Part shown: in pieces, positions 36-18,801 of the stretch
How positions within the stretch are numbered: position 1 is the first letter of the stretch
Layout: each line of letters opens with the position of its first letter
Assembly (NCBI GenBank): GCA_051294905.1
Contig: CM119381.1
Coordinates: 19,406,001-19,470,000, forward strand
DNA length: 64,000 nucleotides
From: Botryllus schlosseri
Taxonomy: Eukaryota
Direction: 5' to 3'
Notes under the pieces: model-generated
Seen by the model: only the letters and a program-made list of their open reading frames with translations
The model's database searches: none
What the model was told of the DNA's origin: nothing
Translations under genes and position numbers: made by a program

Positions 36-1781
36 ATGGCGGATAGAACTGTTAAAAACATTCAACATGACTCAAGTGATGACTATGTTGTTTTAGCATC
101 TTCTTCATCTTCAAAAGAGGGTGATAGTTTGAGTTCAAGTTCTGATTATGATGCTGATGTTGGTCTTGGCACCTCGACAGCCATTAAGCTGATGGCACCT
201 AAAAATATTATGAATAATACCCATGTGTCCCAAGCTCTGGATCGATTGCAAATAACAGACAACAAGGCAACAATGCTGATCGGAGCATTTATTACGGCTT
301 GTGGCGGTGACATAGCAATGTTCTCTCTGTCAAGATCTTCGACAAAGAGAGCCAGGGAAACAAATCGTCTTGAAATTTCCAAGGATATTTCAGAAAAATT
401 TGCAGAAAATAAACCTCAACATGTTGCTATTCATTGGGATGGAAAGCTCACAGAGGATAGATTAGGAAATCGGTATGAGGCTCTGTCAATTGTCCTATCT
501 TGTCATCCTCAATACTCAGAAGGAAAACTACTTGGCATTCAAAAGATGCAAAATGCTGCAGGTCAGACGCAAGCAGAAACCACTTTCAACATAATTGAAA
601 GTTGGAATATAAAAGATGCTGTAACAGCTTTGGTTTTTGACACTACAGCAAGCAACAGCGGCTGGAAGAAGGGTGCGGCAAAGATTCTTGAAGACCTTCT
701 AGGAAGGAAGGTGTTCTACCATGCATGTCGGCACCATGTGTATGAGCTGGTAGTGAAAGACGTTTGGAAATCTTTATTTGGAAAGGCCACAACTGGACCA
801 GAGAATGCATGGTTTGCCCACCTTAAAAGGAACTGGAGCAGTCTTGACAGGGAACAGCAATTCAAGACTCTGACTATTCCTCTATGTTTTGCTGAACGAG
901 CTGCAATGATAGTTGATAAGTTCAAGCTACTGTTGAACAGAAAAGATTTTTTCACACGGGATGACTACAAGCAATGTGTGACTAATGCTCTTGCTCTTCT
1001 CGGTGCAGATGAAGATATACGTCATCACAAACCTGGTGCAGCACACCATGCGAGATGGATGGGTACAATTCTGTATGCTCAAAAGATGTTCATGTGGGCC
1101 GACCAATTAGATTACAAATCTGAAGAAGTTGAACTGCTGCGCCGCTTCAATTTATTTTTGGTTCTCTTTTATATCCCTGCGTGGGTGGATTCAAGCATTG
1201 GTCGTGATGCAGCTGGTAATGACTTGAGATTCGTTCAGCACATGTTGAGTTATAAGGAATATGATGAGCAAGTTTCCACAGCTGCTTCACGAAAGCTTTT
1301 GAAGCACGACTGGTATATTGTTGAGGAAACCGCTGTATACGCCTTGTTTTCACCGACGGAAAGCAAGGAAACCCGGGAAAATATGGCAAAGGCGCTCCTG
1401 CAAGTAGAGCGAACTTCCAGTTTCAGAAGGGGCCCACCCTCATTGAATGCAACTATACAGATCAACAAGGACAGTACGTTGTCTGACCTTATTGGGCCCC
1501 AGTCGTGGTACATATTTGAAGTTTTTGAATGCTCTGGGGATTGGCTGCGTCAACCGGTTGATGATTGGCACTTTTCAGATTCATTCAATAAAATGAATTG
1601 CTACGTTAGTTCTGTCAAAGTCGTTAATGATGCCGCAGAAAGAGGTGTCAAGCTAAGCACAGACTATGCTGCAATCTTGACTGACAATGAACAGCAAAGA
1701 GACAGTTTGCTTCAAGCTGTGGAACAGCATAGGAAGATTTTTGGAGACAGCAGGAAGTCTACTCTTATCAAAGGCCAGTGA
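36..1781 (+). CDS. hAT-superfamily (hATm-like) DDE transposase, apparently intact; frame is open from base 3, so the true start may lie outside the window
   Basis: 581-aa uninterrupted ORF. Candidate catalytic D in HWDGK, D in VFDTTASNSG, a CxxH motif (ACRHH) and E in NDAAERGVK match the hAT DDE layout. A possible right terminus is ...GCATGCATCTA at about 2015 (TAG- on the reverse strand); the left end is not in the window, so no TIR/TSD test is possible. Confidence 0.75.
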   Translation: MADRTVKNIQHDSSDDYVVLASSSSSKEGDSLSSSSDYDADVGLGTSTAIKLMAPKNIMNNTHVSQALDRLQITDNKATMLIGAFITACGGDIAMFSLSRSSTKRARETNRLEISKDISEKFAENKPQHVAIHWDGKLTEDRLGNRYEALSIVLSCHPQYSEGKLLGIQKMQNAAGQTQAETTFNIIESWNIKDAVTALVFDTTASNSGWKKGAAKILEDLLGRKVFYHACRHHVYELVVKDVWKSLFGKATTGPENAWFAHLKRNWSSLDREQQFKTLTIPLCFAERAAMIVDKFKLLLNRKDFFTRDDYKQCVTNALALLGADEDIRHHKPGAAHHARWMGTILYAQKMFMWADQLDYKSEEVELLRRFNLFLVLFYIPAWVDSSIGRDAAGNDLRFVQHMLSYKEYDEQVSTAASRKLLKHDWYIVEETAVYALFSPTESKETRENMAKALLQVERTSSFRRGPPSLNATIQINKDSTLSDLIGPQSWYIFEVFECSGDWLRQPVDDWHFSDSFNKMNCYVSSVKVVNDAAERGVKLSTDYAAILTDNEQQRDSLLQAVEQHRKIFGDSRKSTLIKGQ

Positions 1782-2522
1782 TCTGCAACACTGACCCTGC
1801 GATATACTTTTTAATGATGCCTTTTGTAAATAGCATTTTTGCCTTTGTTAAATCTTGAATAAAAAGTGTAATATGCGTTCGTTTTAGAGAGAGACGTCGA
1901 CTTACCATAACAAGCCATAAGGAGAAATTGACTACTGGTTTGCAATTTATGAGTTACAGTCGTTGTCAACTGGTATGTTTTAGAAGGCTCGAAGGTAGCA
2001 CGATGCATGCATCTAGTTCATTCTTATCTTAATTGGCCAAGCTCCTGTGCAAGAAGTAACAAAACTGTTATACACAGTGTTCAGGTAGAAAATATATTAC
2101 TGGATCGTTATGCTGTTGTCGATGGCAGCATTAACAACGTCAATTTACCATATCGCCAATGCCACGAACAGAAATGGCTGCAAACCAACACAACAGAGTA
2201 GAACGAAATCGTGACCAGCAATGATCACAAAATCAGTATTTCAGCCAATCAGTAGCTTATTATTACAGGTTCCAACCAATCAAAATTCTAGGTTCGTGAT
2301 TGCCCGCCCACTTCATCGATTCCCCGCCCACATGCAGACGGCTACTTTCAAACGCTTTGTAAGAAATCTTAACGACGTTCCTGAGAGCTTCTTTCAGGCT
2401 TGTTGATGTTTTTAATCAATAATCTATAGAATAAGACATTACAACGCAGCATTTTCGAAATTTTTCAAATTTTGGACAACCCTAATGTTGACGCATGCAT
2501 GCTTGCTTTCATATGATTTCAC

Positions 2523-5500
2523 CTTCGTGGCTTTGGGTTGGCTTCGACGTTTTCGCGTGGAGCCCGGCGTCGGTTCCTTGCCGAAATCTATCTTCTCCTT
2601 CGCGGCGACTCCCATTGATTTCAAGGCATCGGCGAAGTATTTTCTCATCAGTTTGTAGTCGGGTTTTTCATCGTACTGCAGATTTGAGACGTATTGCAGA
2701 AACTTTTCAAATTCCACAGCTGAAACGAGCGTATGTCTCGTCATTCAGTTTATGATTTCATTGTTTTAAAACACAAGATTGCGATAAAATAAGGCTTGTC
2801 ATACAGATATTAATAAAAAGAAAATGTAAATAATAAATGAGGCGTGCAGACTGAATGACAAGTAACACAGGATAACATGAAAGGGATGGACAAGCAATGA
2901 AAATGCAGTGGCATGTGTCAGATGGCTAATTTCATGTCGGATTAGGAACAGGCAATATTAAACGCAGACTAGTGTTCACTCCGTAGAATCTGTTGTATGT
3001 CATCTTGAACATGAACATGCCGGCAAACTGTTCCATGGTCAAGCTTTCCTGTTATTTGTCATGAACACATGGCAATTGGACGAGGGCACACGTGTGTTAT
3101 GGAAGGGTGGTCGCCATGGAATTGATGTCGATTTCTAGATTCCCCATATCGTTAATGTTTAGGACGCCAAATGTTTCACGTAGGGAATTGTTGGTTGCAT
3201 ACTGTCATCGCAATCGATTATTTCCTTGCATGGCCAATGCAATAACTAGGCCGATTTTCTTTTCACATGTCAAAATTATAGTGTTAGGTCAAAAATTGTA
3301 GCTTTAGGTCAAAAATTGTCAAAATTGTTTACAAATCCAATATTTATATGAGCAATACGTTTCGTTTGAATCGTAGATTTTTCACTGTCGGTGAACTTAT
3401 CGTTTGATATTTTACAGCTTGCAGCCTACTTTATAGGCCTACCGTGGTAGACGGCCCATTGTCAGCTCATTGTGAATCATAAACGGTCAAATGAAACAAC
3501 TAGGTTGACATGTTGCTATGGTCAACGTACCGCAATATCCTAACCGAAGCAAGACTGCTTGGGCATTGCATGGTTCTTATATCAAGAAGCGCATGATGAA
3601 AAATTGTGATGTAGACAACATTGTCAGAATGAAGCGACACGGTGTGTCACCAACAGTGTACGCACAATTTCAGTGTTGTCAGCCAACAACCGTTGATGTT
3701 GAACGTTCTTTTTCCATTCTTGGCAAGCTGCTTAGTAAGGACAGACACTACCCGAGAATGCAGGAAAGTATCTTTTGTTGTACTACAACAAATTCTAATC
3801 ATTTCTACCAAAATATGTGATGTAACTACTGGAATTCTTCATAGGGCCAGATTTCGTTGAAATACAAGTTTTTTCATGTGAAAATTCGTCAGTTTTCAAG
3901 TAAAAAACGTTAGACAGACAGTTCCAACCAGAAATGAAGATAGGTAGTACAATTTTAACATTATGTGCGAAAACACCTGATTTGCATACGTGAGATCAGA
4001 ATTAGGTTTTTTTAGGTAAAAAAAAGTCAAAATTTATTTAAAAGTAATAACATAAAGCGATTATGATGACTTCCACTCGATTTACCGGCATGGTTTACCT
4101 GCCAAAATAAACAAGGAAATTTTGAGCAAATGAACCACAGAACTAGATAATATGTGCACTTCGCAATTGCACGTTGCCAATGCTGAAGGAGCAATAAAAG
4201 TGTCAAAATTACAATTGTTTAATTTCTAACAATACTATACAGCAGTGGTTCTCAACTGCTGGCCATCGTCAACTTTTATGCAGATTCGGCAGATATATTA
4301 CAATTTTATATCTCAATTGCGAAATGCAAGCTGTTGAAGGCTTATCCGATTATCAATGAGGTAAAGTAACAAATTTTAAAGAGATTACAGCTTCGCCAGT
4401 TTGCCGCTTTGTGACATACCGCAACATACAGTTCATTGGCTACCTTGAACTTTATCCGGTAAAGATTATCATATGTCAGCAAAAACTGAAAGAAACTATA
4501 TCACACTCCAGTGATTTTGATTTAAATTTTGCAATTGACCAAACACTGGAATCCAAGCCTCAAATCTGTAGAGATAAGAAATCCACACCTTTACTGGAGG
4601 TAGCCTCTGGATATACGCTGGCGACAAACTTCTTCACATCCGCCATATGCTTCATCTTTTGGTCCTTAACATAATTCTTATCCGTCAGTTTATTCTCCCA
4701 TGGCAGTGATCCGGACACCCAATGGAGCAGTACGTATCCCAAAATTTCTAAATCAGAACGCCGAGATGGTGCTGCGAGAAAGCAAATTAAATTTTAGCAC
4801 ATCTCCAAAATGAAATATTGGAATCGGCAGTGACTGACCTACACCCTTATGAGCATCTCTGCTTGTGTATTCGATGGTACCGTCGTGCGCCTTTCTTGGA
4901 TCTTCCTTATATTCTTTATGTTTTCCGTCTACCAGATAGCGGTATGCAAGACCAAAATCCACCAGATATATCTTGATGAATTTGGACTTGAAATTGATTG
5001 TCATTCCAGTATTTGTTGTCACATACCTGGCTCGGATCACTGTGACCCAATAAGACATTTCCGCCTTTCACATCGGCGTGGACATATTCATTGTCGTGCA
5101 TATATTCAAGAGAATTGATCTGTGCATAGAAAAGAAGGGTTTCATAAGCCATGGACAGCCTACTGGAGTAATTCTACAGATGTGCTAAGAACACCAGTCC
5201 CACGTTGGTAAAAGTACAAATGAATGTCAATGTCAGTAATGAACAGTGTTGGTCAGAGTAGTCATTGATGTTACTAAATAATGGCAGAAATAATATCGCA
5301 AAGTAGAATGATATGACATGCAGGGAGTACTTGAAGTATAAGCCAAAAAGTTCTGAAAAGTACTCAAGTAGCTTGGGACAGCATGACACAGACCTTCTTA
5401 AGTCAATCGCCAGTGATAGTTTTTAAAAGTACTGCAATCATGTCGCGATTAAATGTAGAATGAATGTTTGGCAACATAAATAGATGTATTTTTTGAATTA

Positions 5501-7007
5501 TATTGACAAGTCAATAATACCTACTGTACTACTCCAAAATGATGGAAGTGTGTCTTTACTGACCTATTCTGGTAATAGTACTTCTGTTTTAACAAAGAGT
5601 ACTCGCTCAAATAAGATGTTTCAACAGGTAGGACTATGGAAATATTTGCAGCAGACTGTCCCCAACCCCTAACTCTACTGGCAACTGTAGTGGGAATAGC
5701 ACAACTTCTACAAAGTAATACGCTCCTATTGTGATCACATAGGCATACGAGTATCACCATATCATATTTAAAGTATTGCAAAAGCGGTGTGGGGCAAGAT
5801 GGATACAGAATAAGACTGAAACTACAAAATGAATTTAAATCGACTTGGACTTCAGATATTCGTAACGACAAATTCAGGTTTAACTACCATAATACGATTC
5901 TGATGTGCGCACCTACATTCAAAACGAAAAATTGTTACAAAACATTCACGCCAGACCACAACACTGTGCTTTTTACTAGAGTGGTGCTTACCAGTTGAAT
6001 TGCGAGCTGGCATACTAGCTGCCTACTAAATCTCTTATTTGCTTTTTCCCACAAGTTTTGAAGGTCGCTCCCAAATCGAGGCATCACCATAAATCTGAGG
6101 TCTTCTTGCCCCGTCTTGTGTAAGCCATGGGCAATATAGGCTGGCACGCCAACGTAAGGCAAGCCGGCGCGTTTTCTCCATGCATTCACTGTGAGGAATA
6201 CGACCATTCACAGCAATGAAAATATGTGTGACAGGTCTTGTAATCTTACAGATTTCTGCTTTCGCCGCCCGTTGATAAAAAGCAATTTCACAAAACAATG
6301 GTCCATTGCCTACAGGTTCCTGGAAAATTAATTGATATACAATATGAACAGAGTTAATATAAACAGACAACAGCAGCATTGACAGGAAATCAAGCAAATC
6401 AACTTTAAGAAGAAGTCCACCATGATAATGGTTAGTTACCCTGATGTTGAATGACTTATTAAAGTACACAAGTACACATTCACGGAATGCATGTTACAGT
6501 TCTGAAATTTTGAAACAGCATAGGAATTGGGGATGTAAATTCAAGCGATGAGATAAAACAGCGAATATCGGAGCTGTGTATTAATCTGACGTATAAGGAT
6601 AGCGAAAGTTATACCAAATAAATGGGACGGGAGCAAATCAAAACATGCCCTCTTAGATGAAAGAATTTAATCACAAATAATTAGAGACTAGTATGTCTGG
6701 GATTTTGGTACTTACGACTTTGACCACATACTGTGCCTTCTCTTTACTTGCATTTTCTTTACTAGCATCGGCTAAAAAGTAGAGACAAACTCAAGCATGA
6801 AATATGAACATCATAATAGCCTATTCCCATTTGCAGGAGCGCGGCATTACCTAAATATATCAATCCGAATCCACCGGATCCAATAGCCTCGCCGATGACC
6901 CATGTTTTCTTTCTCAAATCCTTCATTTCTGTATGTATTGATACGGCAGCAGCCAGTTGATGGCCTCCGGCTGCTTTGGCACCTTTTTTGTTACGCTTTG
7001 GTGGCAT
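2523..7007 (-). CDS. VRK1: Vaccinia-related Ser/Thr kinase; exons 7007-6851, 6771-6716, 6319-6250, 6188-5992, 5119-5027, 4971-4839, 4771-4589, 2719-2523; terminal exon not resolved
   Basis: Joined exons are phase-compatible at GT-AG junctions and give [64 protein letters not shown] and [11 protein letters not shown], which are VRK-family kinase motifs. The exon 7 donor could be 4589 or 4595. Confidence 0.9.
3518..3820 (+). pseudogene. Degenerate hAT-like transposase C-terminal fragment in a VRK1 intron
   Basis: [24 protein letters not shown] resembles the hAT C-terminal P-T/S-x-x-x-ERxFS motif around the last catalytic Glu; no upstream domains are present. Confidence 0.55.
4243..4400 (+). 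mobile_element. Truncated, diverged left end of the same hAT family as 33217-34199
   Basis: Starts CAGTGGTTCTCAAC and stays alignable by eye with 33217-33370 (atattacaattttata..., gttgaaggctt...). No right TIR found. Confidence 0.6.
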
Positions 7008-11948: not shown

Positions 11949-14900
11949 ATGTCAAACTCCCCTCCTCAGTTGAGCCAACAATCGTTGGAAGAGTTTGAAG
12001 AATACGAGCGAATCATAGAACAAAACCGGGCTGTCGACAGCAGCGACAGTGACGACTCGTCAAATTCGCAAACAACTCCCAAAAAACCTCACGGCCGGCT
12101 GCCTGCTGATACTGGCTATCACAGTGTTGGAGATTTTACGTTTTCGATACAAGATCCCACGTCCAGCGATAGAAACGACGACAGGGTGTCATCGAATTCG
12201 ACAAGCGATGCTGCAAGCGTTAAAAGCGCGCGATCATCCGCGCGAATGCGAAATAATGCATCACATGCACAATCTTCCGATATCGATGACGACAAAAGTG
12301 AAAAATCTGCAACCTTTGCGAGTGCGTCAATAGAGCAAAACGAGAATATTGATCCAGTCCAAAGCGGCACTGACGACGATGGGAAACTTGTCGCCACCTT
12401 TGGTACGACAGAAAACTTCCAGGCGCTACTACAAAGACAACTGGATGACGCAGAGGAAGAATCCAGCAGCTCTGAGGAGGAGCCGACCCCTGTAGTCGAA
12501 GAGAAACGGCCCGCGACCACTCCAAGCCCCAGAGTTCAACTGCCCCGTCCTAGAAAACCGGCCTACATGAGCCGAACCACGAGATCCCCGGCTGCCAATA
12601 GAGCGCGCCGCGCCAGTCAGAAATCAAAAACGTGGGCGCCACGTTCCCATTCGCCGGGATTTCCGGAAAGCAGCGACGATCTGAGCGTACATTCGGACGC
12701 GTCCAGGACTGAATTGCGAAGGAAGTTACGAAAGGAGAGAGTCGAGAGAGAAAAAGAGAAATCCGTTAAGCACCAGCTGCAGAGCGAGTACGACGATTTG
12801 TTGACCAAGTACGCGGAAGCCGAAAATGTCATCGATCAATTAAGAATCGGAGCGAAAATCGACATCATGGCACAGCTTCCCGATGACGCCGACATGGAGA
12901 AGTTGAAGAAATCACAAGAGGAATATGATACTGCAAGGTCCGAGCCAATTTTGGACCTTTCACATTCTCCGAGATCAACACGTGATGCTGTCACTGATAG
13001 CAGCCTCAAGCTTCCTGCTGCAGCTAACCGCGAGTTTGCGCGTATAGCGTTGATACACGACGCAGACGAATTGCGAGGTCAGATGGAGTCTTTCGCGGCG
13101 CTTCTGGACGAAGGCCACCACATTTCCGACCGAGAGAAAAGAGATGTGCTGGACAGCATAATCAGCAATGTCCACAAGTTAGAAAATGATCGGATGAAGG
13201 CAGCTAGGGATCATGAAGCCGTCCGGCAAGCTGCGATATTAACCGGGAATGCGAGCGGCGCGCTCCTCGAAGATTTTGATCCACAATTGGAAATTGCTGG
13301 TAAGATTTTTCAACTGAATCGACTTTTGGAGGATTTAAAGGATAAGGTAGCCGTGGGGTCAAGTTTACCGCAGACGCCGACATCCGGACGAAGGCAATTT
13401 ACTACAGACGAGGCGTCGGAAACCAGCGAGTCCTGGAACAGCAACATCGACGATAGGTTCAACCAGCAGTTGAAACTTTACAACAAACCGGCGTTGGCTG
13501 ATGAGCAGTCGGACACGACCGTGTCTAGTCATTTCTTGTCTAGCGACGATACCACAGTCGAGTTTCCAGTGGATAGGGAATCGCGACGCGATTTATCAAA
13601 ACAGGGTAGCGACGATATGCCGGAAAGGTTTTTAAGGCCTGTATCAAGCCGCAGGAATAGTTCGTCGAAGGGTACGTCGCGTACCGTGATCAGTAACGGC
13701 GACTCGAGTCCGTCTCGCAGTGTGAGGAGCAGTTATTCACCGTCTAAAGTGGATTCGATGTCGCAAAAGTCCCCGGATTCGCGAAGAAATTCGAAAAGTC
13801 GATTGCCCGTGCCGGTATCTTCATTGACGAATGAGCGCCCGGACAGAGCGGGTGGCAATAGGAAAAAGTCGCCTTCCAGCAATGAAATGGACGGGGACAG
13901 TGGCTTTGTAGGGTCTGTGAGCAGTAGGGAATCGATGGCGGCCAAGTCGCCCCGTGCTGCGTCGCGGAAACAGGAGTTATCGCCTGTTTTATCAGTACCA
14001 CCTAGTGAACGCAGCACGGTCTCTCAGTCGCAGCAAACCCGAGGGTTGAAGCCGTCGGCCAGACCTAGATCGGCATCGCGACATTCAAACGTGTCGGCGC
14101 CACAGTCCACGTACACCCAAGACGATACGAGAAACGAATCAGACTACTTCAAGCCGGAAACAACCAAAAGCTCTGCGTCGAGTAGAAAAGGGCAGAAGAA
14201 AAAAGCCCCGAAATCAGAAGACGGTAGTAGCGTGTGGTCTGTGCCGGTAAGATCGGCACCCCCTATTCCGTCCCATGTCAGAATCCGCAAAGGCGTGTCG
14301 GGAACACCGCTTCATTCTTCGGCGCCTTCTCAAAACACATCGCTACGAGAAACGCTGGGGCACGGCTCTGAAAAATCGAGACCCAGCAGCAGGAGATCGA
14401 CCGCGAGCAGGGACAGCGCTCTGGATTTGATTCGCGGCGAAATAGCGAGACTCCGGCAGGAGCTTGTGGATAATCAAAAGGCGGCCGAAACACGGTCCGA
14501 CAGGGGCCGGTCTGCGGACCGTAAGCAAAGCAGAAGAAGAAGTTACGCTTCCGAAGATCTCAGCACAGAGACAGAATCACCCACGCAAACCGAGAAGACA
14601 TCCGCTAGGCAAGGACGTAGCAGGAGACGACATTCGACCCAGGGAAGACGCAGCATTTCGAAAGGCTCTGAAAACACCGGGATCACTGTAATCGAGAGAC
14701 GAGACGCGAAAAGTGGCAGCGACATTCCGCTTAATCAAGCGCACGAGCAAGCTGTAAAGGAGGAAACAGTTCCGAAAGGCCACTGGGAGTATATACCGCC
14801 GTATTTTTCTCCAGCCGTTGGTCCGCAAATTCTCACCCCGAGACACGTGCCAGTTCCTACTGTAGTCGCTACCCCGCTGCCCCAGCCTGCGATGGTGCAA

Positions 14901-15287
14901 CTCGAACCTGCTTTTTACAGCCCCGTTCGGTACCCTTCGCCGGCTAGGATTTACGTTCCGATACCCGCTTACGAATCTCCGAAGTCCTCGTTTCGACCGG
15001 AACGCATTGTTACGGTTCGTACGCGGCAAGACAGCCCGAGGAGGTCCGGTAGGACGAGGGACGCGGAAGAAAACGATAGGCCTTTAAGACGAAGCCACCT
15101 CAGATCTCCAGTGAAAAGGTCGTCGTCGGTGCCCCCGCTTCGGCAAAGCATCCTAGATCCGCAGTTGAGCCTGTCCCTGCAAAGAGCGGAAAGGGCGGCC
15201 GATACCCTGCAGCGCAAGTCGAGGTCCATGTACCGGAGTTTGAGGGATACGTACAGCAAGGCAGAACTTTCTTTATCGTACGTTTAA
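11949..15287 (+). CDS. AKNA: AKNA-like microtubule-organisation protein, single coding exon
   Basis: EYDDLLTKYAEAENVIDQLRIGAK matches the AKNA-domain signature as I recall it. Also present: a DSGFVGS motif, a C-terminal L..SLQRA..AA..L helix and long Ser/Arg-rich disordered linkers. No clear GRP AT-hook seen. Confidence 0.78.
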   Translation: MSNSPPQLSQQSLEEFEEYERIIEQNRAVDSSDSDDSSNSQTTPKKPHGRLPADTGYHSVGDFTFSIQDPTSSDRNDDRVSSNSTSDAASVKSARSSARMRNNASHAQSSDIDDDKSEKSATFASASIEQNENIDPVQSGTDDDGKLVATFGTTENFQALLQRQLDDAEEESSSSEEEPTPVVEEKRPATTPSPRVQLPRPRKPAYMSRTTRSPAANRARRASQKSKTWAPRSHSPGFPESSDDLSVHSDASRTELRRKLRKERVEREKEKSVKHQLQSEYDDLLTKYAEAENVIDQLRIGAKIDIMAQLPDDADMEKLKKSQEEYDTARSEPILDLSHSPRSTRDAVTDSSLKLPAAANREFARIALIHDADELRGQMESFAALLDEGHHISDREKRDVLDSIISNVHKLENDRMKAARDHEAVRQAAILTGNASGALLEDFDPQLEIAGKIFQLNRLLEDLKDKVAVGSSLPQTPTSGRRQFTTDEASETSESWNSNIDDRFNQQLKLYNKPALADEQSDTTVSSHFLSSDDTTVEFPVDRESRRDLSKQGSDDMPERFLRPVSSRRNSSSKGTSRTVISNGDSSPSRSVRSSYSPSKVDSMSQKSPDSRRNSKSRLPVPVSSLTNERPDRAGGNRKKSPSSNEMDGDSGFVGSVSSRESMAAKSPRAASRKQELSPVLSVPPSERSTVSQSQQTRGLKPSARPRSASRHSNVSAPQSTYTQDDTRNESDYFKPETTKSSASSRKGQKKKAPKSEDGSSVWSVPVRSAPPIPSHVRIRKGVSGTPLHSSAPSQNTSLRETLGHGSEKSRPSSRRSTASRDSALDLIRGEIARLRQELVDNQKAAETRSDRGRSADRKQSRRRSYASEDLSTETESPTQTEKTSARQGRSRRRHSTQGRRSISKGSENTGITVIERRDAKSGSDIPLNQAHEQAVKEETVPKGHWEYIPPYFSPAVGPQILTPRHVPVPTVVATPLPQPAMVQLEPAFYSPVRYPSPARIYVPIPAYESPKSSFRPERIVTVRTRQDSPRRSGRTRDAEENDRPLRRSHLRSPVKRSSSVPPLRQSILDPQLSLSLQRAERAADTLQRKSRSMYRSLRDTYSKAELSLSYV

Positions 15288-16734
15288 TGTATTTTACGTA
15301 CGGTGTACTTTGTACCAAGTATTTTGCGTTGAAACGAATCAGTGCCAACAGTTTGTAACGAAGCTCAATTCTTCCGTACGCAGGGATCAACGATAGCACG
15401 TTTTTTACATTATTTGTATTATGCCTTTTATTCTGTGTCGGGGATATATATCCCTGTTCTGTGTGTACGTCTCTTCAATAACCAGCTGTCCTACGGACTG
15501 CCGTATAATCCGAGTTTTTCTCGAGTCAACATTCCAACTTTTCTATGAATGTTTGAAGTGTCTTCTCGTCAGATGACCATTCAATTTTGGAAGATGTCTT
15601 GAAAATGCATGTAACATCTACATATATTTGGCACAATATGGGTTTTCATATCAACATTGGATCCTGTTTCACCAAATTATTCCATAGTTAAGAAAAACTG
15701 TTAATAGGTCTACCTAACAATCAGCTTTACCTTGTGATGTGTGTATGTCTCTCGGTTAATATATGGCAAGACTTCAATCGAAGGGCTCTGCTCCTATTAT
15801 GTGTAAGGCTTAATGAAATTATTCGTGTCTGAATTCCTAGTCATCCCATACAGCACTCACAGTGTCTAATTTCACTCCATTGTGCCTTATGATTAAAATA
15901 TCCGTTGTCTTCACTCTTCCTATTTACATTGTGAATTCCACTCCACTGTAAAGCTTTATGAGATATGCCTATGTTTCTGCGAGCGATCTACTTTAATGGT
16001 GTAACATTGCTTCATAGTACCTCGAGTTCTTATTTTGTATTGTGTAATTCAAACTCTCAATGTGAAGAGCATGGACAGATCCACTAGCGTAGACTATAAT
16101 ACACACATTTTTCATTGTGACGTATGTTCCAGCATACCGCACTTTTAGATGATCAAAGTAACTCCATTGCAACCCTTCCAATATGGTGGATTGGTATGAA
16201 GTTTGTAGAATCTTGGACGCTATTGCTAATTTGGGTTATTTGTGCAGATTTCACAATACACACATTGCATGAATTTCATTGTTTGGTTTTACCTTTGGAC
16301 TACTCTTGCTTCACAATATTGCCACATTGATTTCTGACTAGTCCAGAGTGAATAGCAATTTATCACCTTTTCACCAATTCTCTATTGTGATGTGACTTGC
16401 TGAACCAGTGGTGGTAGTCTGAGAATTATATTTCAGGTATTTTTATCCTAAACTGCACCGTTGTTGTGGATATTGTGTATATATGTTCAAAGAGTTTTAA
16501 AATTGTACACATCGTAGCATTATCATTGAAGACTTCACTGACTATAATTTACGTTTGTGTAATGTACCCACAATATCTACCTTGCTGGGACAAAGAATTT
16601 TCTTGCTTATTTTATCACAGAGTAAATGCAGCATTGTGAATTGTGTATATTCCATTCTATATTTTCTGATATGTTACCGATGATTCTGTTTTAGATCACT
16701 AGCCGTGCGCCGATAGTGCTTCGTATTTAAAAGT

Positions 16735-17067
16735 ATGCAGAAAAGCTTCACGCTGCGGAGTGGGTATCATATGCCACCGAACATCACTTATGTCTTTGTG
16801 CCACAATATACGCAAGCACGTCGAAGAGTGACACACAGAAGGGAGGGAGCATATCGAAGTTCAAGGCGTCGTTACGATCAAGATGACGATGAGTTTTATT
16901 CTCAAGAACGCTGTTCATGTTCTTCTGATGCCAAAGTCAGTCAGAGCCTGTCAAGTTTGTACCAGTTAACTTCTTTGGATAAATCTCTGCAAAGGGCTGA
17001 AACGGCATCTGGAATGCTAAGAGACAAGTCTCGAAGGATGTATAGAACATTCCGGGACACTATTTAA
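16735..17067 (+). CDS. 110-aa stand-alone paralog of the AKNA C-terminus
   Basis: LDKSLQRAETASGMLRDKSRRMYRTFRDTI aligns with LSLSLQRAERAADTLQRKSRSMYRSLRDTY of the upstream ORF, and ITYVFVPQY with RIYVPIPAY. Acceptor-like TTCTGTTTTAG ends at 16694; AATAAA at 17066-17071. Confidence 0.6.
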   Translation: MQKSFTLRSGYHMPPNITYVFVPQYTQARRRVTHRREGAYRSSRRRYDQDDDEFYSQERCSCSSDAKVSQSLSSLYQLTSLDKSLQRAETASGMLRDKSRRMYRTFRDTI

Positions 17068-18801
17068 TAAAAAGAAGGATCATTTACGAGACGGTGTTTC
17101 TTACTCTGATGATTCTATTGTTCAATGACAGCACTATTTGTTTGGCGATGATAAATGAAATTTGCTTTGTGACTTAAGCACAGCTAGGTGCTATGAATCT
17201 CATCTGAGGTCAAGAATTATGGCGCGAAGTGTTTCCTATAATATACGCGTACCGCTACAACAATAAAAAGGAAACACATTGAGCTCTTCACACTATTTTT
17301 AATACTTTTGTTCAATGGACAACTAGTGATGTATGGATAATAATGTATGTTGACCTGATAATGTTCTTTAATCTCTGACTTCGCTGCAAAGCTAAAACGG
17401 GTCTTGTGGCCAAACAAATTTCCTCAATTGTGTGTAATGTGGTGGTGTCCAATTCTGCAACCGTGTATAATGGAAATATTCCTTTTTTGTAAACTAAATA
17501 GCTTATAAAGTAGTTAGCGAAGCGTATTCATTTTACTTAGTTTTACCCGTCTCTGATGCAACCCAATTTACAAAGTGTAGAACCTATGCAGGATGTGTCA
17601 CATCACATCTGCAAGATTCCTGTTTTTGCAATGCTCGCTTTACGTTTGATGATTTAGCTTTTAGCAAGTTCTCTCTCGAAATGATGCCGATTAGGTACAA
17701 GATAAAATTTGATGATGCCAAAACAAAATTGCGTCAAGTTACAGATCACCTCACCAATTGTATAGCACTGAATATGTAACTGTATTGGACTATTGACATG
17801 CATTTTAAAGTTTCGTTCTATGTCAATAACAAGTAAGCTTCCTCCTGGTCAATGGTCATCCTGCAATGCACTTATTTATCTACATAATGGACGGCCTTAC
17901 CTCCTGCATAGAGGTACAGTATGAACATGTATAGTGAGCCTTTGGAATATTTTTTTAACTGCATGTGGCCAAAACAACACTTTTTCTTGATACTGGTACT
18001 ATTCAAATTCATAATATAGTAGACTACCTTATCTCTCTGGCTATGCATGGCATTCACCACTGTGATAAAAAGTGCGATACGTGTCATTGTATCATCAAAC
18101 CATATAACATGCAATTTGGTCTTTTTGAATGATTTTGTATTTTAAAGGGATTACATTCCATGAAGTTCTGCTTGTTTTGCACGAAATCCAAATGTTGTAA
18201 TCTCGTGTTTGAAATTGGTGATCTTGTGAGATGAAGACATCTTCATTACGTATCTTAGTCTAGTCATTGACTTGCCCTCAGATCGAATTGTTACGGTTCT
18301 TCCAATCTTCTTATTGACAAATCAAGTTTTTCTAGTTGCCATAAGGATATTGAAAATGGATTTGTACAATTATATATGCGGTGCCAAAATGATTGATCTG
18401 TTTCTGTGTGCTAGCGAGACTTTGTTGAAAAGTATTTGCTATGCTACAAGATGGATACTCAAAATTCTTTAATATTTGACAAAGTCTTTTCCTGAACACT
18501 AAGCTTGGCAAGAATGGTTGAGATGATATTTGCTAACGCTCCATTGTTTGCTAATGATTGTGACACTTGAGATAATCGGTGTATCTTTTGTAAGGTTTCA
18601 TGCAAGACGATTTCTATTTATACAAGGTAATGTATTCCACATCCCTTTCAGGCACGCCACAAAATTTAGGCTTTTGTGCTCCACTACAATACACTGTTAT
18701 ACTATGTTAACCGATATTTTTCTTACGTCAGGTTAAGAAAGCATGTGTTGTTGACATATTTTTCCTGTTGACTGAAGCTGTTCGGTTTTGCGGTTGTTAC
18801 C

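What the first reader, a model, noticed from the sequence alone, without database searches (positions are those of the whole stretch)
16695..17071. Stand-alone 110-aa duplicate of the AKNA C-terminal module, a candidate microprotein regulator
Seen: 1.45 kb downstream of AKNA, a co-oriented ORF repeats the layout of its last ~110 aa (Y-x-P-x-x-I-x-YV...PxY, Arg-rich linker, then SLQRAE.A...L..KSR.MYR..RDT). The helix is well conserved at protein level while the linker has diverged, which suggests selection. An acceptor at 16694 is followed by an in-frame stop (16714-16716) before the ATG, so it fits a separate gene with a 5'-UTR or trans-splice acceptor better than an alternative last exon. AATAAA overlaps the stop. 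Established: the C-terminal part of mammalian AKNA mediates centrosomal targeting. Inference: a two-component locus in which a mini-AKNA competes for the docking site of the full-length protein. I know of no description of this.
Basis: partly seen in the sequence, partly recalled or inferred. Interest (0 to 1): 0.7.

Follow-up and report, generated by a model that had tools for sequence, protein, structure and literature searches.

The report
Conserved mini-copy of AKNA-like tail
Just downstream of a sea squirt's only AKNA-like (centrosome-protein-like) gene lies a small 110-codon gene copy of that protein's tail; it has stayed intact in at least three sea-squirt species, so it is probably a real, unannotated small protein, but its expression and role are untested.

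Summary
ORF 16735-17067 (+, 110 aa) is a true paralogue of the last ~110 aa of the intronless AKNA-like ORF 11949-15287 (37% identity, E 7e-10). These are the only two copies in the genome.

New here: the mini ORF has full-length small relatives in two other ascidians (P0005, 117 aa; P0004, 108 aa). P0005 lies 2.0 kb downstream of, and co-oriented with, that species' AKNA-like gene. The three minis form one clade (support 89/91) and share a C-x-C-S motif. All lack the parent's invariant PLRRSHL..KRSSS motif.

Silent sites between mini and parent are saturated, while the terminal helix keeps 17 of 26 residues. Neutral simulations almost never give this together with an open frame. So this is an old duplicate kept under coding selection, though it evolves about four times faster than its parent.

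Separate cistron is favoured over alternative last exon: stops follow acceptor 16694 in all frames, no ATG precedes 16735, the start is shared with P0005, and no splice joints were seen. The read data were thin, so the transcript architecture is unresolved.

The "competes with AKNA for docking" idea is untested, and the module was not detectably related to vertebrate AKNA. The scan's only other note on this stretch is the same finding.

The parts
11949..15287 (+). AKNA-like protein gene, whole 1112-aa CDS in one exon (parent of the duplicate)
   Evidence: ORF list. 65% identical over its full length to P0001 and 40% to Styela clava LOC120340620. Pfam AKNA domain E 0.009, below the cut-off. It is the only AKNA-like locus in the genome.
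14913..15287 (+). Parent C-terminal module: FYSPVRYPSPARIYVPIPAY, basic linker, EENDRPLRRSHLRSPVKRSSS, terminal helix SLQRAERAADTLQRKSRSMYRSLRDT, tail
   Evidence: Alignments A2 and A4. PLRRSHL..KRSSS and the helix are invariant across four ascidian AKNA-like proteins.
16690..16694 (+). Acceptor-like TTTAG after a pyrimidine run; candidate cis- or trans-splice acceptor 40 nt upstream of the ATG
   Evidence: Sequence. Stops follow in all three frames, and no ATG lies in 16695-16734. Its use is not shown by reads.
16714..16716 (+). TAG in the frame of the mini ORF, closing it upstream
   Evidence: Sequence and three-frame translation.
16735..17067 (+). Mini ORF, 110 aa, 13.1 kDa, pI 10; paralogue of the parent module
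   Evidence: Orthologue-like small ORFs P0005 and P0004.
16912..16923 (+). C-S-C-S (residues 60-63), part of a C-x-C-S motif shared by all three minis and absent from AKNA-like proteins
   Evidence: Alignment A3, invariant C60, C62, S63. The parent has RSPVKRSSS at this position.
16966..17061 (+). C-terminal amphipathic basic helix (residues 78-109), the best conserved part
   Evidence: AlphaFold2 model: helix 78-109 with pLDDT 80-91, the rest disordered. In the 26 helix codons compared, pN is 0.23 against a saturated pS of 0.96.
17066..17071 (+). AATAAA overlapping the TAA stop; the first canonical poly(A) signal downstream of the AKNA-like stop as well
   Evidence: Pattern listing: AATAAA only at 17066 and 17262 between 15288 and 17700, and ATTAAA at 15892.

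Best explanation
The ORF at 16735-17067 is a selectively maintained, separately initiated coding sequence. It is a 13-kDa, basic, mostly disordered protein ending in one amphipathic helix. It arose by an old duplication of the 3' end of an already intronless AKNA-like gene in a stolidobranch-type ascidian lineage, and it has stayed just downstream of that gene.

Shown: paralogy, age (it predates the split of at least three species), conserved position in a second species, an open frame with a shared start, and constraint concentrated on the helix.

Inferred: it is translated from its own AUG, the first AUG after acceptor 16694. The mRNA would be made either by splicing (cis or spliced-leader) at 16694 or from a longer transcript that ends at the AATAAA on its stop.

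Inferred, weaker (about 0.3 given that the gene is real): it acts through the retained helix as a mimic of the parent's tail. It would bind what that helix binds but lack the parent's PLRRSHL..KRSSS motif and the whole upstream protein, and so modulate the parent. This is microProtein-like.
For: Paralogy: E 7e-10, and it is the only second copy in the genome.

Relatives: an exhaustive HMM search found small proteins P0005 (117 aa, covering profile positions 18-133) and P0004 (108 aa). The mini against P0005 is 38% identical from residue 1 to the end, E 8e-18. Against P0004 it gives E 3e-12.

Synteny: P0005 lies at 5617-5970 on the same 9,199-nt contig as the AKNA-like gene P0001 (225-3599), on the same strand.

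Tree: the minis form one clade at 89/91 support. Grouping the mini with its own genome's AKNA-like tail is rejected, p-AU 0.0155.

Shared derived features: the C-x-C-S motif and an MQ start.

Selection: 32 of 42 identical residues use different codons. In the helix pS is 0.96 and pN is 0.23. Neutral simulations give P(open frame and helix identity of 17/26 or more) of 1e-4 or less at 0.5 or more substitutions per site. Flanks of the ORF retain no similarity.

Start context: A at -3, and no upstream ATG after the acceptor.

Transcription hints: ten RNA-sized runs from four studies hold the stretch. In X23 the only reads on the 6 kb are two pairs inside the ORF.
Against: No direct evidence of a discrete mRNA, a spliced leader or translation.

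In X1, contigs are collinear with the genome from 15760 to beyond 17600. One crosses the candidate donor at 16622 unspliced. X1 may even be DNA. In the true RNA run X19, the few reads cover spacer and ORF alike.

The mini evolves about 4 times faster than the parent module over the same species pair (path 1.96 against 0.50), so constraint is weak outside the helix.

Styela clava has no mini within 10 kb downstream of its AKNA-like gene.

No DNA of the orthologues could be fetched, so there is no dN/dS between orthologues.

No annotation in any source names such a protein.

The proposed mode of action has no support from any test here.
Confidence: 0.6

Rival explanations
1. Real, conserved small protein, but functionally uncoupled from the AKNA-like parent. 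After duplication it took on a new role built on the C-x-C-S motif and the basic helix, so it is not a regulator or competitor of the parent.
For: It has lost the parent module's most invariant motif, PLRRSHL..KRSSS, and gained a mini-specific C-x-C-S. Its branches are long (0.8-1.4 against 0.1-0.5). The complex prediction gave nothing usable.
Against: The residues kept best are exactly those invariant in the parent helix (L..RAE.A...L..KSR.MYR..RD). It has kept its position beside the parent in two species.
Confidence: 0.15
2. Non-functional relic of a partial tandem duplication whose frame happens still to be open.
For: Fast evolution, GC3 down to the genomic background (0.40 against 0.62 for the parent tail), no annotation anywhere, no clear mRNA evidence, and absence next to the Styela clava gene.
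Against: Open, collinear ORFs of 108-117 aa in three species, with only in-frame gaps. Silent sites are saturated while the helix is conserved. Neutral simulation gives P of 1e-4 or less. The flanks have decayed beyond recognition but the ORF has not.
Confidence: 0.12
3. Alternative 3'-terminal exon of the AKNA-like gene. A donor inside the big exon (for example ATG|GTGCAA at 14894/14895, phase 0) would join an AG just at the ATG (16733 or 16740). That would swap the parent tail for the mini tail.
For: A phase-0 join to 16741 would be in frame, as read directly from the sequence. The first canonical AATAAA downstream of the AKNA-like stop is the one on the mini's stop. Same strand and conserved order.
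Against: No joints in any of the four runs laid. Acceptor 16694 is followed by stops in all frames. The AGs at 16733 and 16740 have a poor pyrimidine tract and an AG just upstream. The candidate donors are weak. The AKNA-like stop and tail are conserved in P0001. Gene calls in two other species start at a Met at the equivalent place, MQ in both this genome and P0005. Annotated Styela and Clavelina isoforms differ by only 1-4 residues.
Confidence: 0.08

Closest known systems
microProteins (miPs), e.g. Id versus bHLH, LITTLE ZIPPER versus HD-ZIPIII (reviewed in PMC9638782)
   Same: Small (under 20 kDa), related by descent to one module of a much larger protein, and lacking the rest of that protein. 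Such proteins typically act by engaging the same interaction surface.
   Different: No interaction has been shown here. The retained module is a single helix plus a disordered region, not a defined dimerisation domain. The parent is a putative centrosome or microtubule protein, not a transcription factor. The mini sits in tandem directly downstream of its parent.
AKNA (vertebrate subdistal-appendage protein; its C-terminal 324 aa are needed for centrosome localisation according to Camargo Ortega et al. 2019, as cited in PMC8535656; it recruits gamma-TuRC, bioRxiv 10.64898/2026.08.17.745143)
   Same: The parent ORF and its ascidian relatives hit the Pfam AKNA domain at the same relative position. 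The Clavelina relative is named 'AKNA domain-containing protein' by UniRef.
   Different: All Pfam scores are below the gathering cut-off (17-26 against 28.1 bits). A profile of the C-terminal module found no vertebrate protein at E of 0.001 or less. So equivalence of this module with the mammalian targeting region is not established.
SL-trans-spliced downstream cistrons of ascidian operons (Ciona, PMC1488885)
   Same: Same strand as the upstream gene, a good acceptor 40 nt before the first AUG, and no canonical poly(A) signal for the upstream gene before the mini's own.
   Different: Ciona operons have no intercistronic DNA at all, whereas here the spacer is 1.45 kb (2.0 kb in the relative). 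No SL-bearing read was seen.
Translated downstream ORFs in 3'UTRs
   Same: RNA-like coverage may be continuous from the AKNA-like CDS through the mini ORF. The relative's contig also carries both.
   Different: Here the peptide sequence itself is conserved and is homologous to the main ORF's own tail. Many AUGs lie between the main stop and 16735, which makes reinitiation unlikely.

Membership tests
Paralogue of the ascidian AKNA-like C-terminal module | Significant sequence similarity over the whole module | tested here: met
   BLASTP E 7e-10, 37% over 106 aa. Profile hits.
Paralogue of the ascidian AKNA-like C-terminal module | Terminal helix motif L..RAE.A...L..KSR.MYR..RD | tested here: met
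   Invariant columns in A2 and in the 8-row alignment. Modelled as a helix, pLDDT 80-91.
Paralogue of the ascidian AKNA-like C-terminal module | Invariant PLRRSHL..S..KRSSS motif | tested here: not met
   Present in all four AKNA-like proteins. Replaced in all three minis by a stretch holding C-x-C-S.
AKNA family (Pfam PF12443), for the parent ORF | AKNA domain above Pfam's gathering score | tested here: inconclusive
   17.0 bits (this genome), 17.1 (Styela) and 25.8 (Clavelina) against a cut-off of 28.1. The hits fall at the same relative position. None for P0001.
AKNA family (Pfam PF12443), for the mini ORF | AKNA domain | tested here: not met
   No Pfam hit for the mini, and none to AKNA for P0004 or P0005. 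The mini covers only the tail, which lies outside the Pfam domain.
microProtein | Small single-module protein related by descent to part of a larger protein | tested here: met
   110 aa, 13.1 kDa. Paralogy shown.
microProtein | Binds the parent or the parent's partners through the shared module and thereby modulates it | tested here: inconclusive
   The complex prediction gave no verdict. This needs an experiment.
microProtein | Expressed and translated | tested here: inconclusive
   RNA-sized runs hold the stretch. Raw RNA reads are very few, and there are no junctions, starts or ends.
Alternative 3'-terminal exon | Exon-exon junction from the upstream gene | tested here: not met
   Joints: none in the four runs, but depth was low.
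Alternative 3'-terminal exon | Frame open from the acceptor | tested here: not met
   Stops in all three frames within 36 nt of acceptor 16694. Only the weak AGs at 16733 and 16740 would allow it.
Ciona-type SL-resolved operon | No or very short intercistronic DNA | tested here: not met
   1,447-nt spacer, against none in Ciona (PMC1488885).
Ciona-type SL-resolved operon | Spliced leader on the downstream mRNA | not testable with these tools
   The read tool's single call showed no loose end at 16695 among the rows printed. Two rows were not shown.

The most novel reading that the evidence does not exclude
A chordate centrosome or microtubule-organising protein (AKNA-like) is controlled by a tandemly encoded microProtein made from its own tail. 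The 13-kDa mini keeps the terminal docking helix but not the PLRRSHL..KRSSS motif or the rest of the protein. It would titrate the parent's docking site or partner, possibly being produced from the same primary transcript by trans-splicing.
Probability: 0.2. Interest if true: 0.7.

Novelty: new member of a known kind. Interest (0 to 1): 0.5.

Why it matters
If it is translated, this is an unannotated, lineage-restricted small protein family, so far seen in three ascidian species. It was born from the tail of the only AKNA-like gene and has been kept beside it. That would give a natural, genetically tractable handle on what the conserved terminal helix of ascidian AKNA-like proteins binds. It would also be one of few animal examples of a microProtein-type partial duplicate outside transcription factors. 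It further shows how a short duplicate can survive long enough for its silent sites to saturate. If it is not translated, it is only an unusually persistent relic.

Tried and rejected
1. Word-indexed protein searches with the mini alone and with the three-mini profile added no further members.

2. DNA of the orthologous contigs (Logan SRR25569784, ERR9287620) could not be fetched because the sample files are too large. So there is no dN/dS between orthologues and no view of their acceptor or start context. Whether these contigs are RNA or DNA is unknown, and no paper cites the runs.

3. Read laying (one call allowed). X11 laid nothing. X19 gave 48 mostly partial reads and X23 gave 4. X1 is of uncertain type. 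The nine variants inside 16727-17146 were not among the rows printed.

4. Complex prediction of the mini with the parent tail gave no verdict (score 0.01, folds under pLDDT 50). It is neither for nor against binding.

5. ESM Atlas look-ups of the mini and of the parent tail gave no usable hit.

6. A 23-nt direct repeat (14935 and 16533) suggested a second relic of the IYV..PQY motif in the spacer. Shuffling shows that no part of the spacer matches the mini or the parent tail above chance, so it was rejected.

7. No synteny between the Styela flanks and this window by tblastx.

8. The Rfam scan of 15200-17700 found nothing credible. The bacterial-type promoter and terminator scan is irrelevant to a eukaryote.

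9. Weak Pfam hits (DUF6468, CCDC32, COMP) are all far below their cut-offs and were ignored.

Full report
**What is there.** The window is part of a sea-squirt chromosome: G000:C11, a 495-Mb assembly. On the + strand a 1112-aa ORF (11949-15287) encodes an AKNA-like protein in a single exon. 1,447 nt further on lies a 110-aa ORF (16735-17067).
- BLASTP aligns the small ORF with the last ~106 residues of the large one at 37% identity, E 7e-10.
- In a six-frame search of the whole genome the AKNA-like tail is the only other credible match.
- I add that no ATG lies between 16695 and 16734, and that stops follow the acceptor in all three frames.
- Recognisable similarity to the parent is limited to 16777-17061. 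Neither the spacer nor the downstream flank keeps any.

**Is it more than a decaying copy?** Within the window, 32 of the 42 identical residues use different codons, and third positions differ at 71% of aligned codons.
- In the 26-codon terminal helix the synonymous difference is saturated (pS 0.96), while pN is 0.23 and 17 of 26 residues are identical. In the remainder pN is 0.57.
- I simulated neutral decay of the parent sequence towards the local base composition. At 0.5 or more substitutions per site, an open frame together with that helix identity arose in at most 1 of 10,000 runs, even ignoring indels.

**Relatives elsewhere.** An exhaustive HMM search of 1.84 billion representative proteins with a profile of the module returned six proteins. 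Three are long AKNA-like proteins:
- P0001, 1124 aa, from a Logan assembly.
- P0002, Styela clava LOC120340620.
- P0003, Clavelina lepadiformis, called 'AKNA domain-containing protein' by UniRef.

Three are small:
- P0005 (117 aa) aligns with the mini from Met-1 to the last residue: 38% identity, E 8e-18.
- P0004 (108 aa) aligns over the C-terminal 75 residues: E 3e-12.
- P0006 (74 aa) looks like a stray last exon of a Clavelina-type AKNA gene, not a mini.

**Conserved position.** P0005 is encoded on the same 9,199-nt contig as P0001. The AKNA-like gene is at 225-3599 and the small ORF at 5617-5970, both on the + strand. So the arrangement 'AKNA-like gene, about 2 kb, mini' is conserved in a species whose AKNA-like protein is 65% identical to this one.

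**Shared features and phylogeny.** The three minis share features that the parent lacks: a C-x-C-S motif, a Y-Q/T-L/S stretch before the helix, and an MQ start in two of them. All three lack the parent's invariant PLRRSHL..KRSSS motif.
- A maximum-likelihood tree puts the three minis on one side of a branch, support 89/91.
- It rejects a recent, species-specific duplication (mini with its own parent), p-AU 0.0155.
- The path between this mini and P0005 is 1.96 changes per site, against 0.50 between the two parents. The mini therefore evolves about four times faster.
- Long-branch attraction could inflate the mini clade, but the shared derived motifs point the same way.

Three open, collinear frames with only in-frame gaps, over a divergence that has erased the flanks, are hard to reconcile with neutrality. 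I conclude that the ORF is under coding selection. That selection is strongest on the helix and weak elsewhere.

**What the protein looks like.** It is 13.1 kDa with pI 10. AlphaFold2, on a three-sequence alignment, gives a disordered chain for residues 1-77 and one confident helix at 78-109, pLDDT 80-91. No Pfam family matches it.

**Separate gene, alternative exon or 3'UTR passenger?**
- *For a separate cistron.* The frame is closed upstream, the AUG is the first after a good acceptor and has A at -3, and the start is shared with P0005. The parent's own stop and tail are conserved in P0001.
- *An alternative last exon* would need the weak AGs at 16733 or 16740 and a weak internal donor. No joint was seen in any run.
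- *Limits of the read evidence.* Of the two true RNA runs, X19 gave 48 mostly partial reads spread over spacer and ORF alike. X23 gave two read pairs, both inside the ORF. X1 is one of ten RNA-sized runs from four studies that hold the stretch. It covers 11847 to beyond 17600 almost continuously, including the spacer, and it crosses a candidate donor at 16622 unspliced. It may be total RNA or DNA.
- *Poly(A) signals.* The only canonical AATAAA between the AKNA-like stop and 17700 are the one on the mini's stop and one at 17262.
- *Reading.* Coverage in X1 begins about 100 nt before the AKNA-like ATG, and the relative's contig begins 224 nt before its ATG. Together with the poly(A) pattern, this leaves open that both ORFs lie on one primary transcript.
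- *Operon comparison.* Ciona-type operons have no intercistronic DNA (PMC1488885), so this would not be a typical one. A trans- or cis-spliced mRNA starting at 16695 remains possible but unshown.

**Function.** But I could not connect this ascidian module to the vertebrate protein. The profile search found no vertebrate hit, and the parent reaches only sub-threshold scores for the Pfam AKNA domain. The complex prediction of the mini with the parent tail gave no verdict. The mimic or competitor model therefore rests only on which residues are kept. I rate it at about 0.3 given a real gene, or about 0.2 overall.

**Comparison with known kinds and verdict.** The closest concept is the microProtein: a small paralogue of one module of a larger protein (PMC9638782). 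The size and descent criteria are met. Interaction and expression are not shown. No literature on AKNA in ascidians mentions such a gene. I file it as a new, candidate member of a known kind.
- Observation: confirmed.
- Interest: 0.5.
- The scan's only other note on this stretch is the same finding read again.

Noticed in passing
window 11949-15287; L005 (Styela clava) 10001-31604: The only AKNA-like gene of this genome has its whole 1112-aa CDS in one exon and is G+C-rich (51-55% against about 38% around it). The Styela clava orthologue has at least 22 coding exons over 21.6 kb, including an intron inside the C-terminal module. That suggests wholesale intron loss or replacement by a retrogene, before the mini was duplicated, since the mini has no intron either. 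The 10-kb Styela flanks show no synteny with this window.
   Followed up: partly
window 15090-15140 (parent residues about 1048-1064): The most invariant stretch of ascidian AKNA-like tails is D.PLRRSHL.S.KRSSS(VPP). From memory, untested, KRSSSVP fits the R-S-x-pS-x-P 14-3-3 mode-1 consensus and basophilic kinase sites. All three minis have lost it, so they would escape any regulation exerted there.
   Followed up: no
window 16622-16694: A textbook-looking 73-nt intron (AGA|GTAAAT ... If real, the mini would have a cis-spliced 5'UTR exon ending at 16621 rather than a trans-spliced leader. An X1 contig (16478-16664) crosses the donor unspliced.
   Followed up: partly
window 15600-16450: In run X1 the spacer between the two ORFs has about 3 times the depth of either ORF (45-59 against 9-17), although it is single-copy in the assembly. 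One contig has 14 unmatched letters before 15648. This could be a separate transcript, or a repeat collapsed in the assembly. It remains unexplained.
   Followed up: no
window 12801-14465: Of the 40 X1 variants printed for the AKNA-like exon, 32 fall on third codon positions. That indicates about 3% allelic or strain divergence with strong purifying selection on the parent.
   Followed up: partly
P0006 (ENA contig, 938 nt): This 74-aa gene call is homologous to the KRSSS-to-end part of Clavelina-type AKNA. It is probably just a last exon on a short contig, not a mini gene: it has no C-x-C-S and no N-terminal part.
   Followed up: partly
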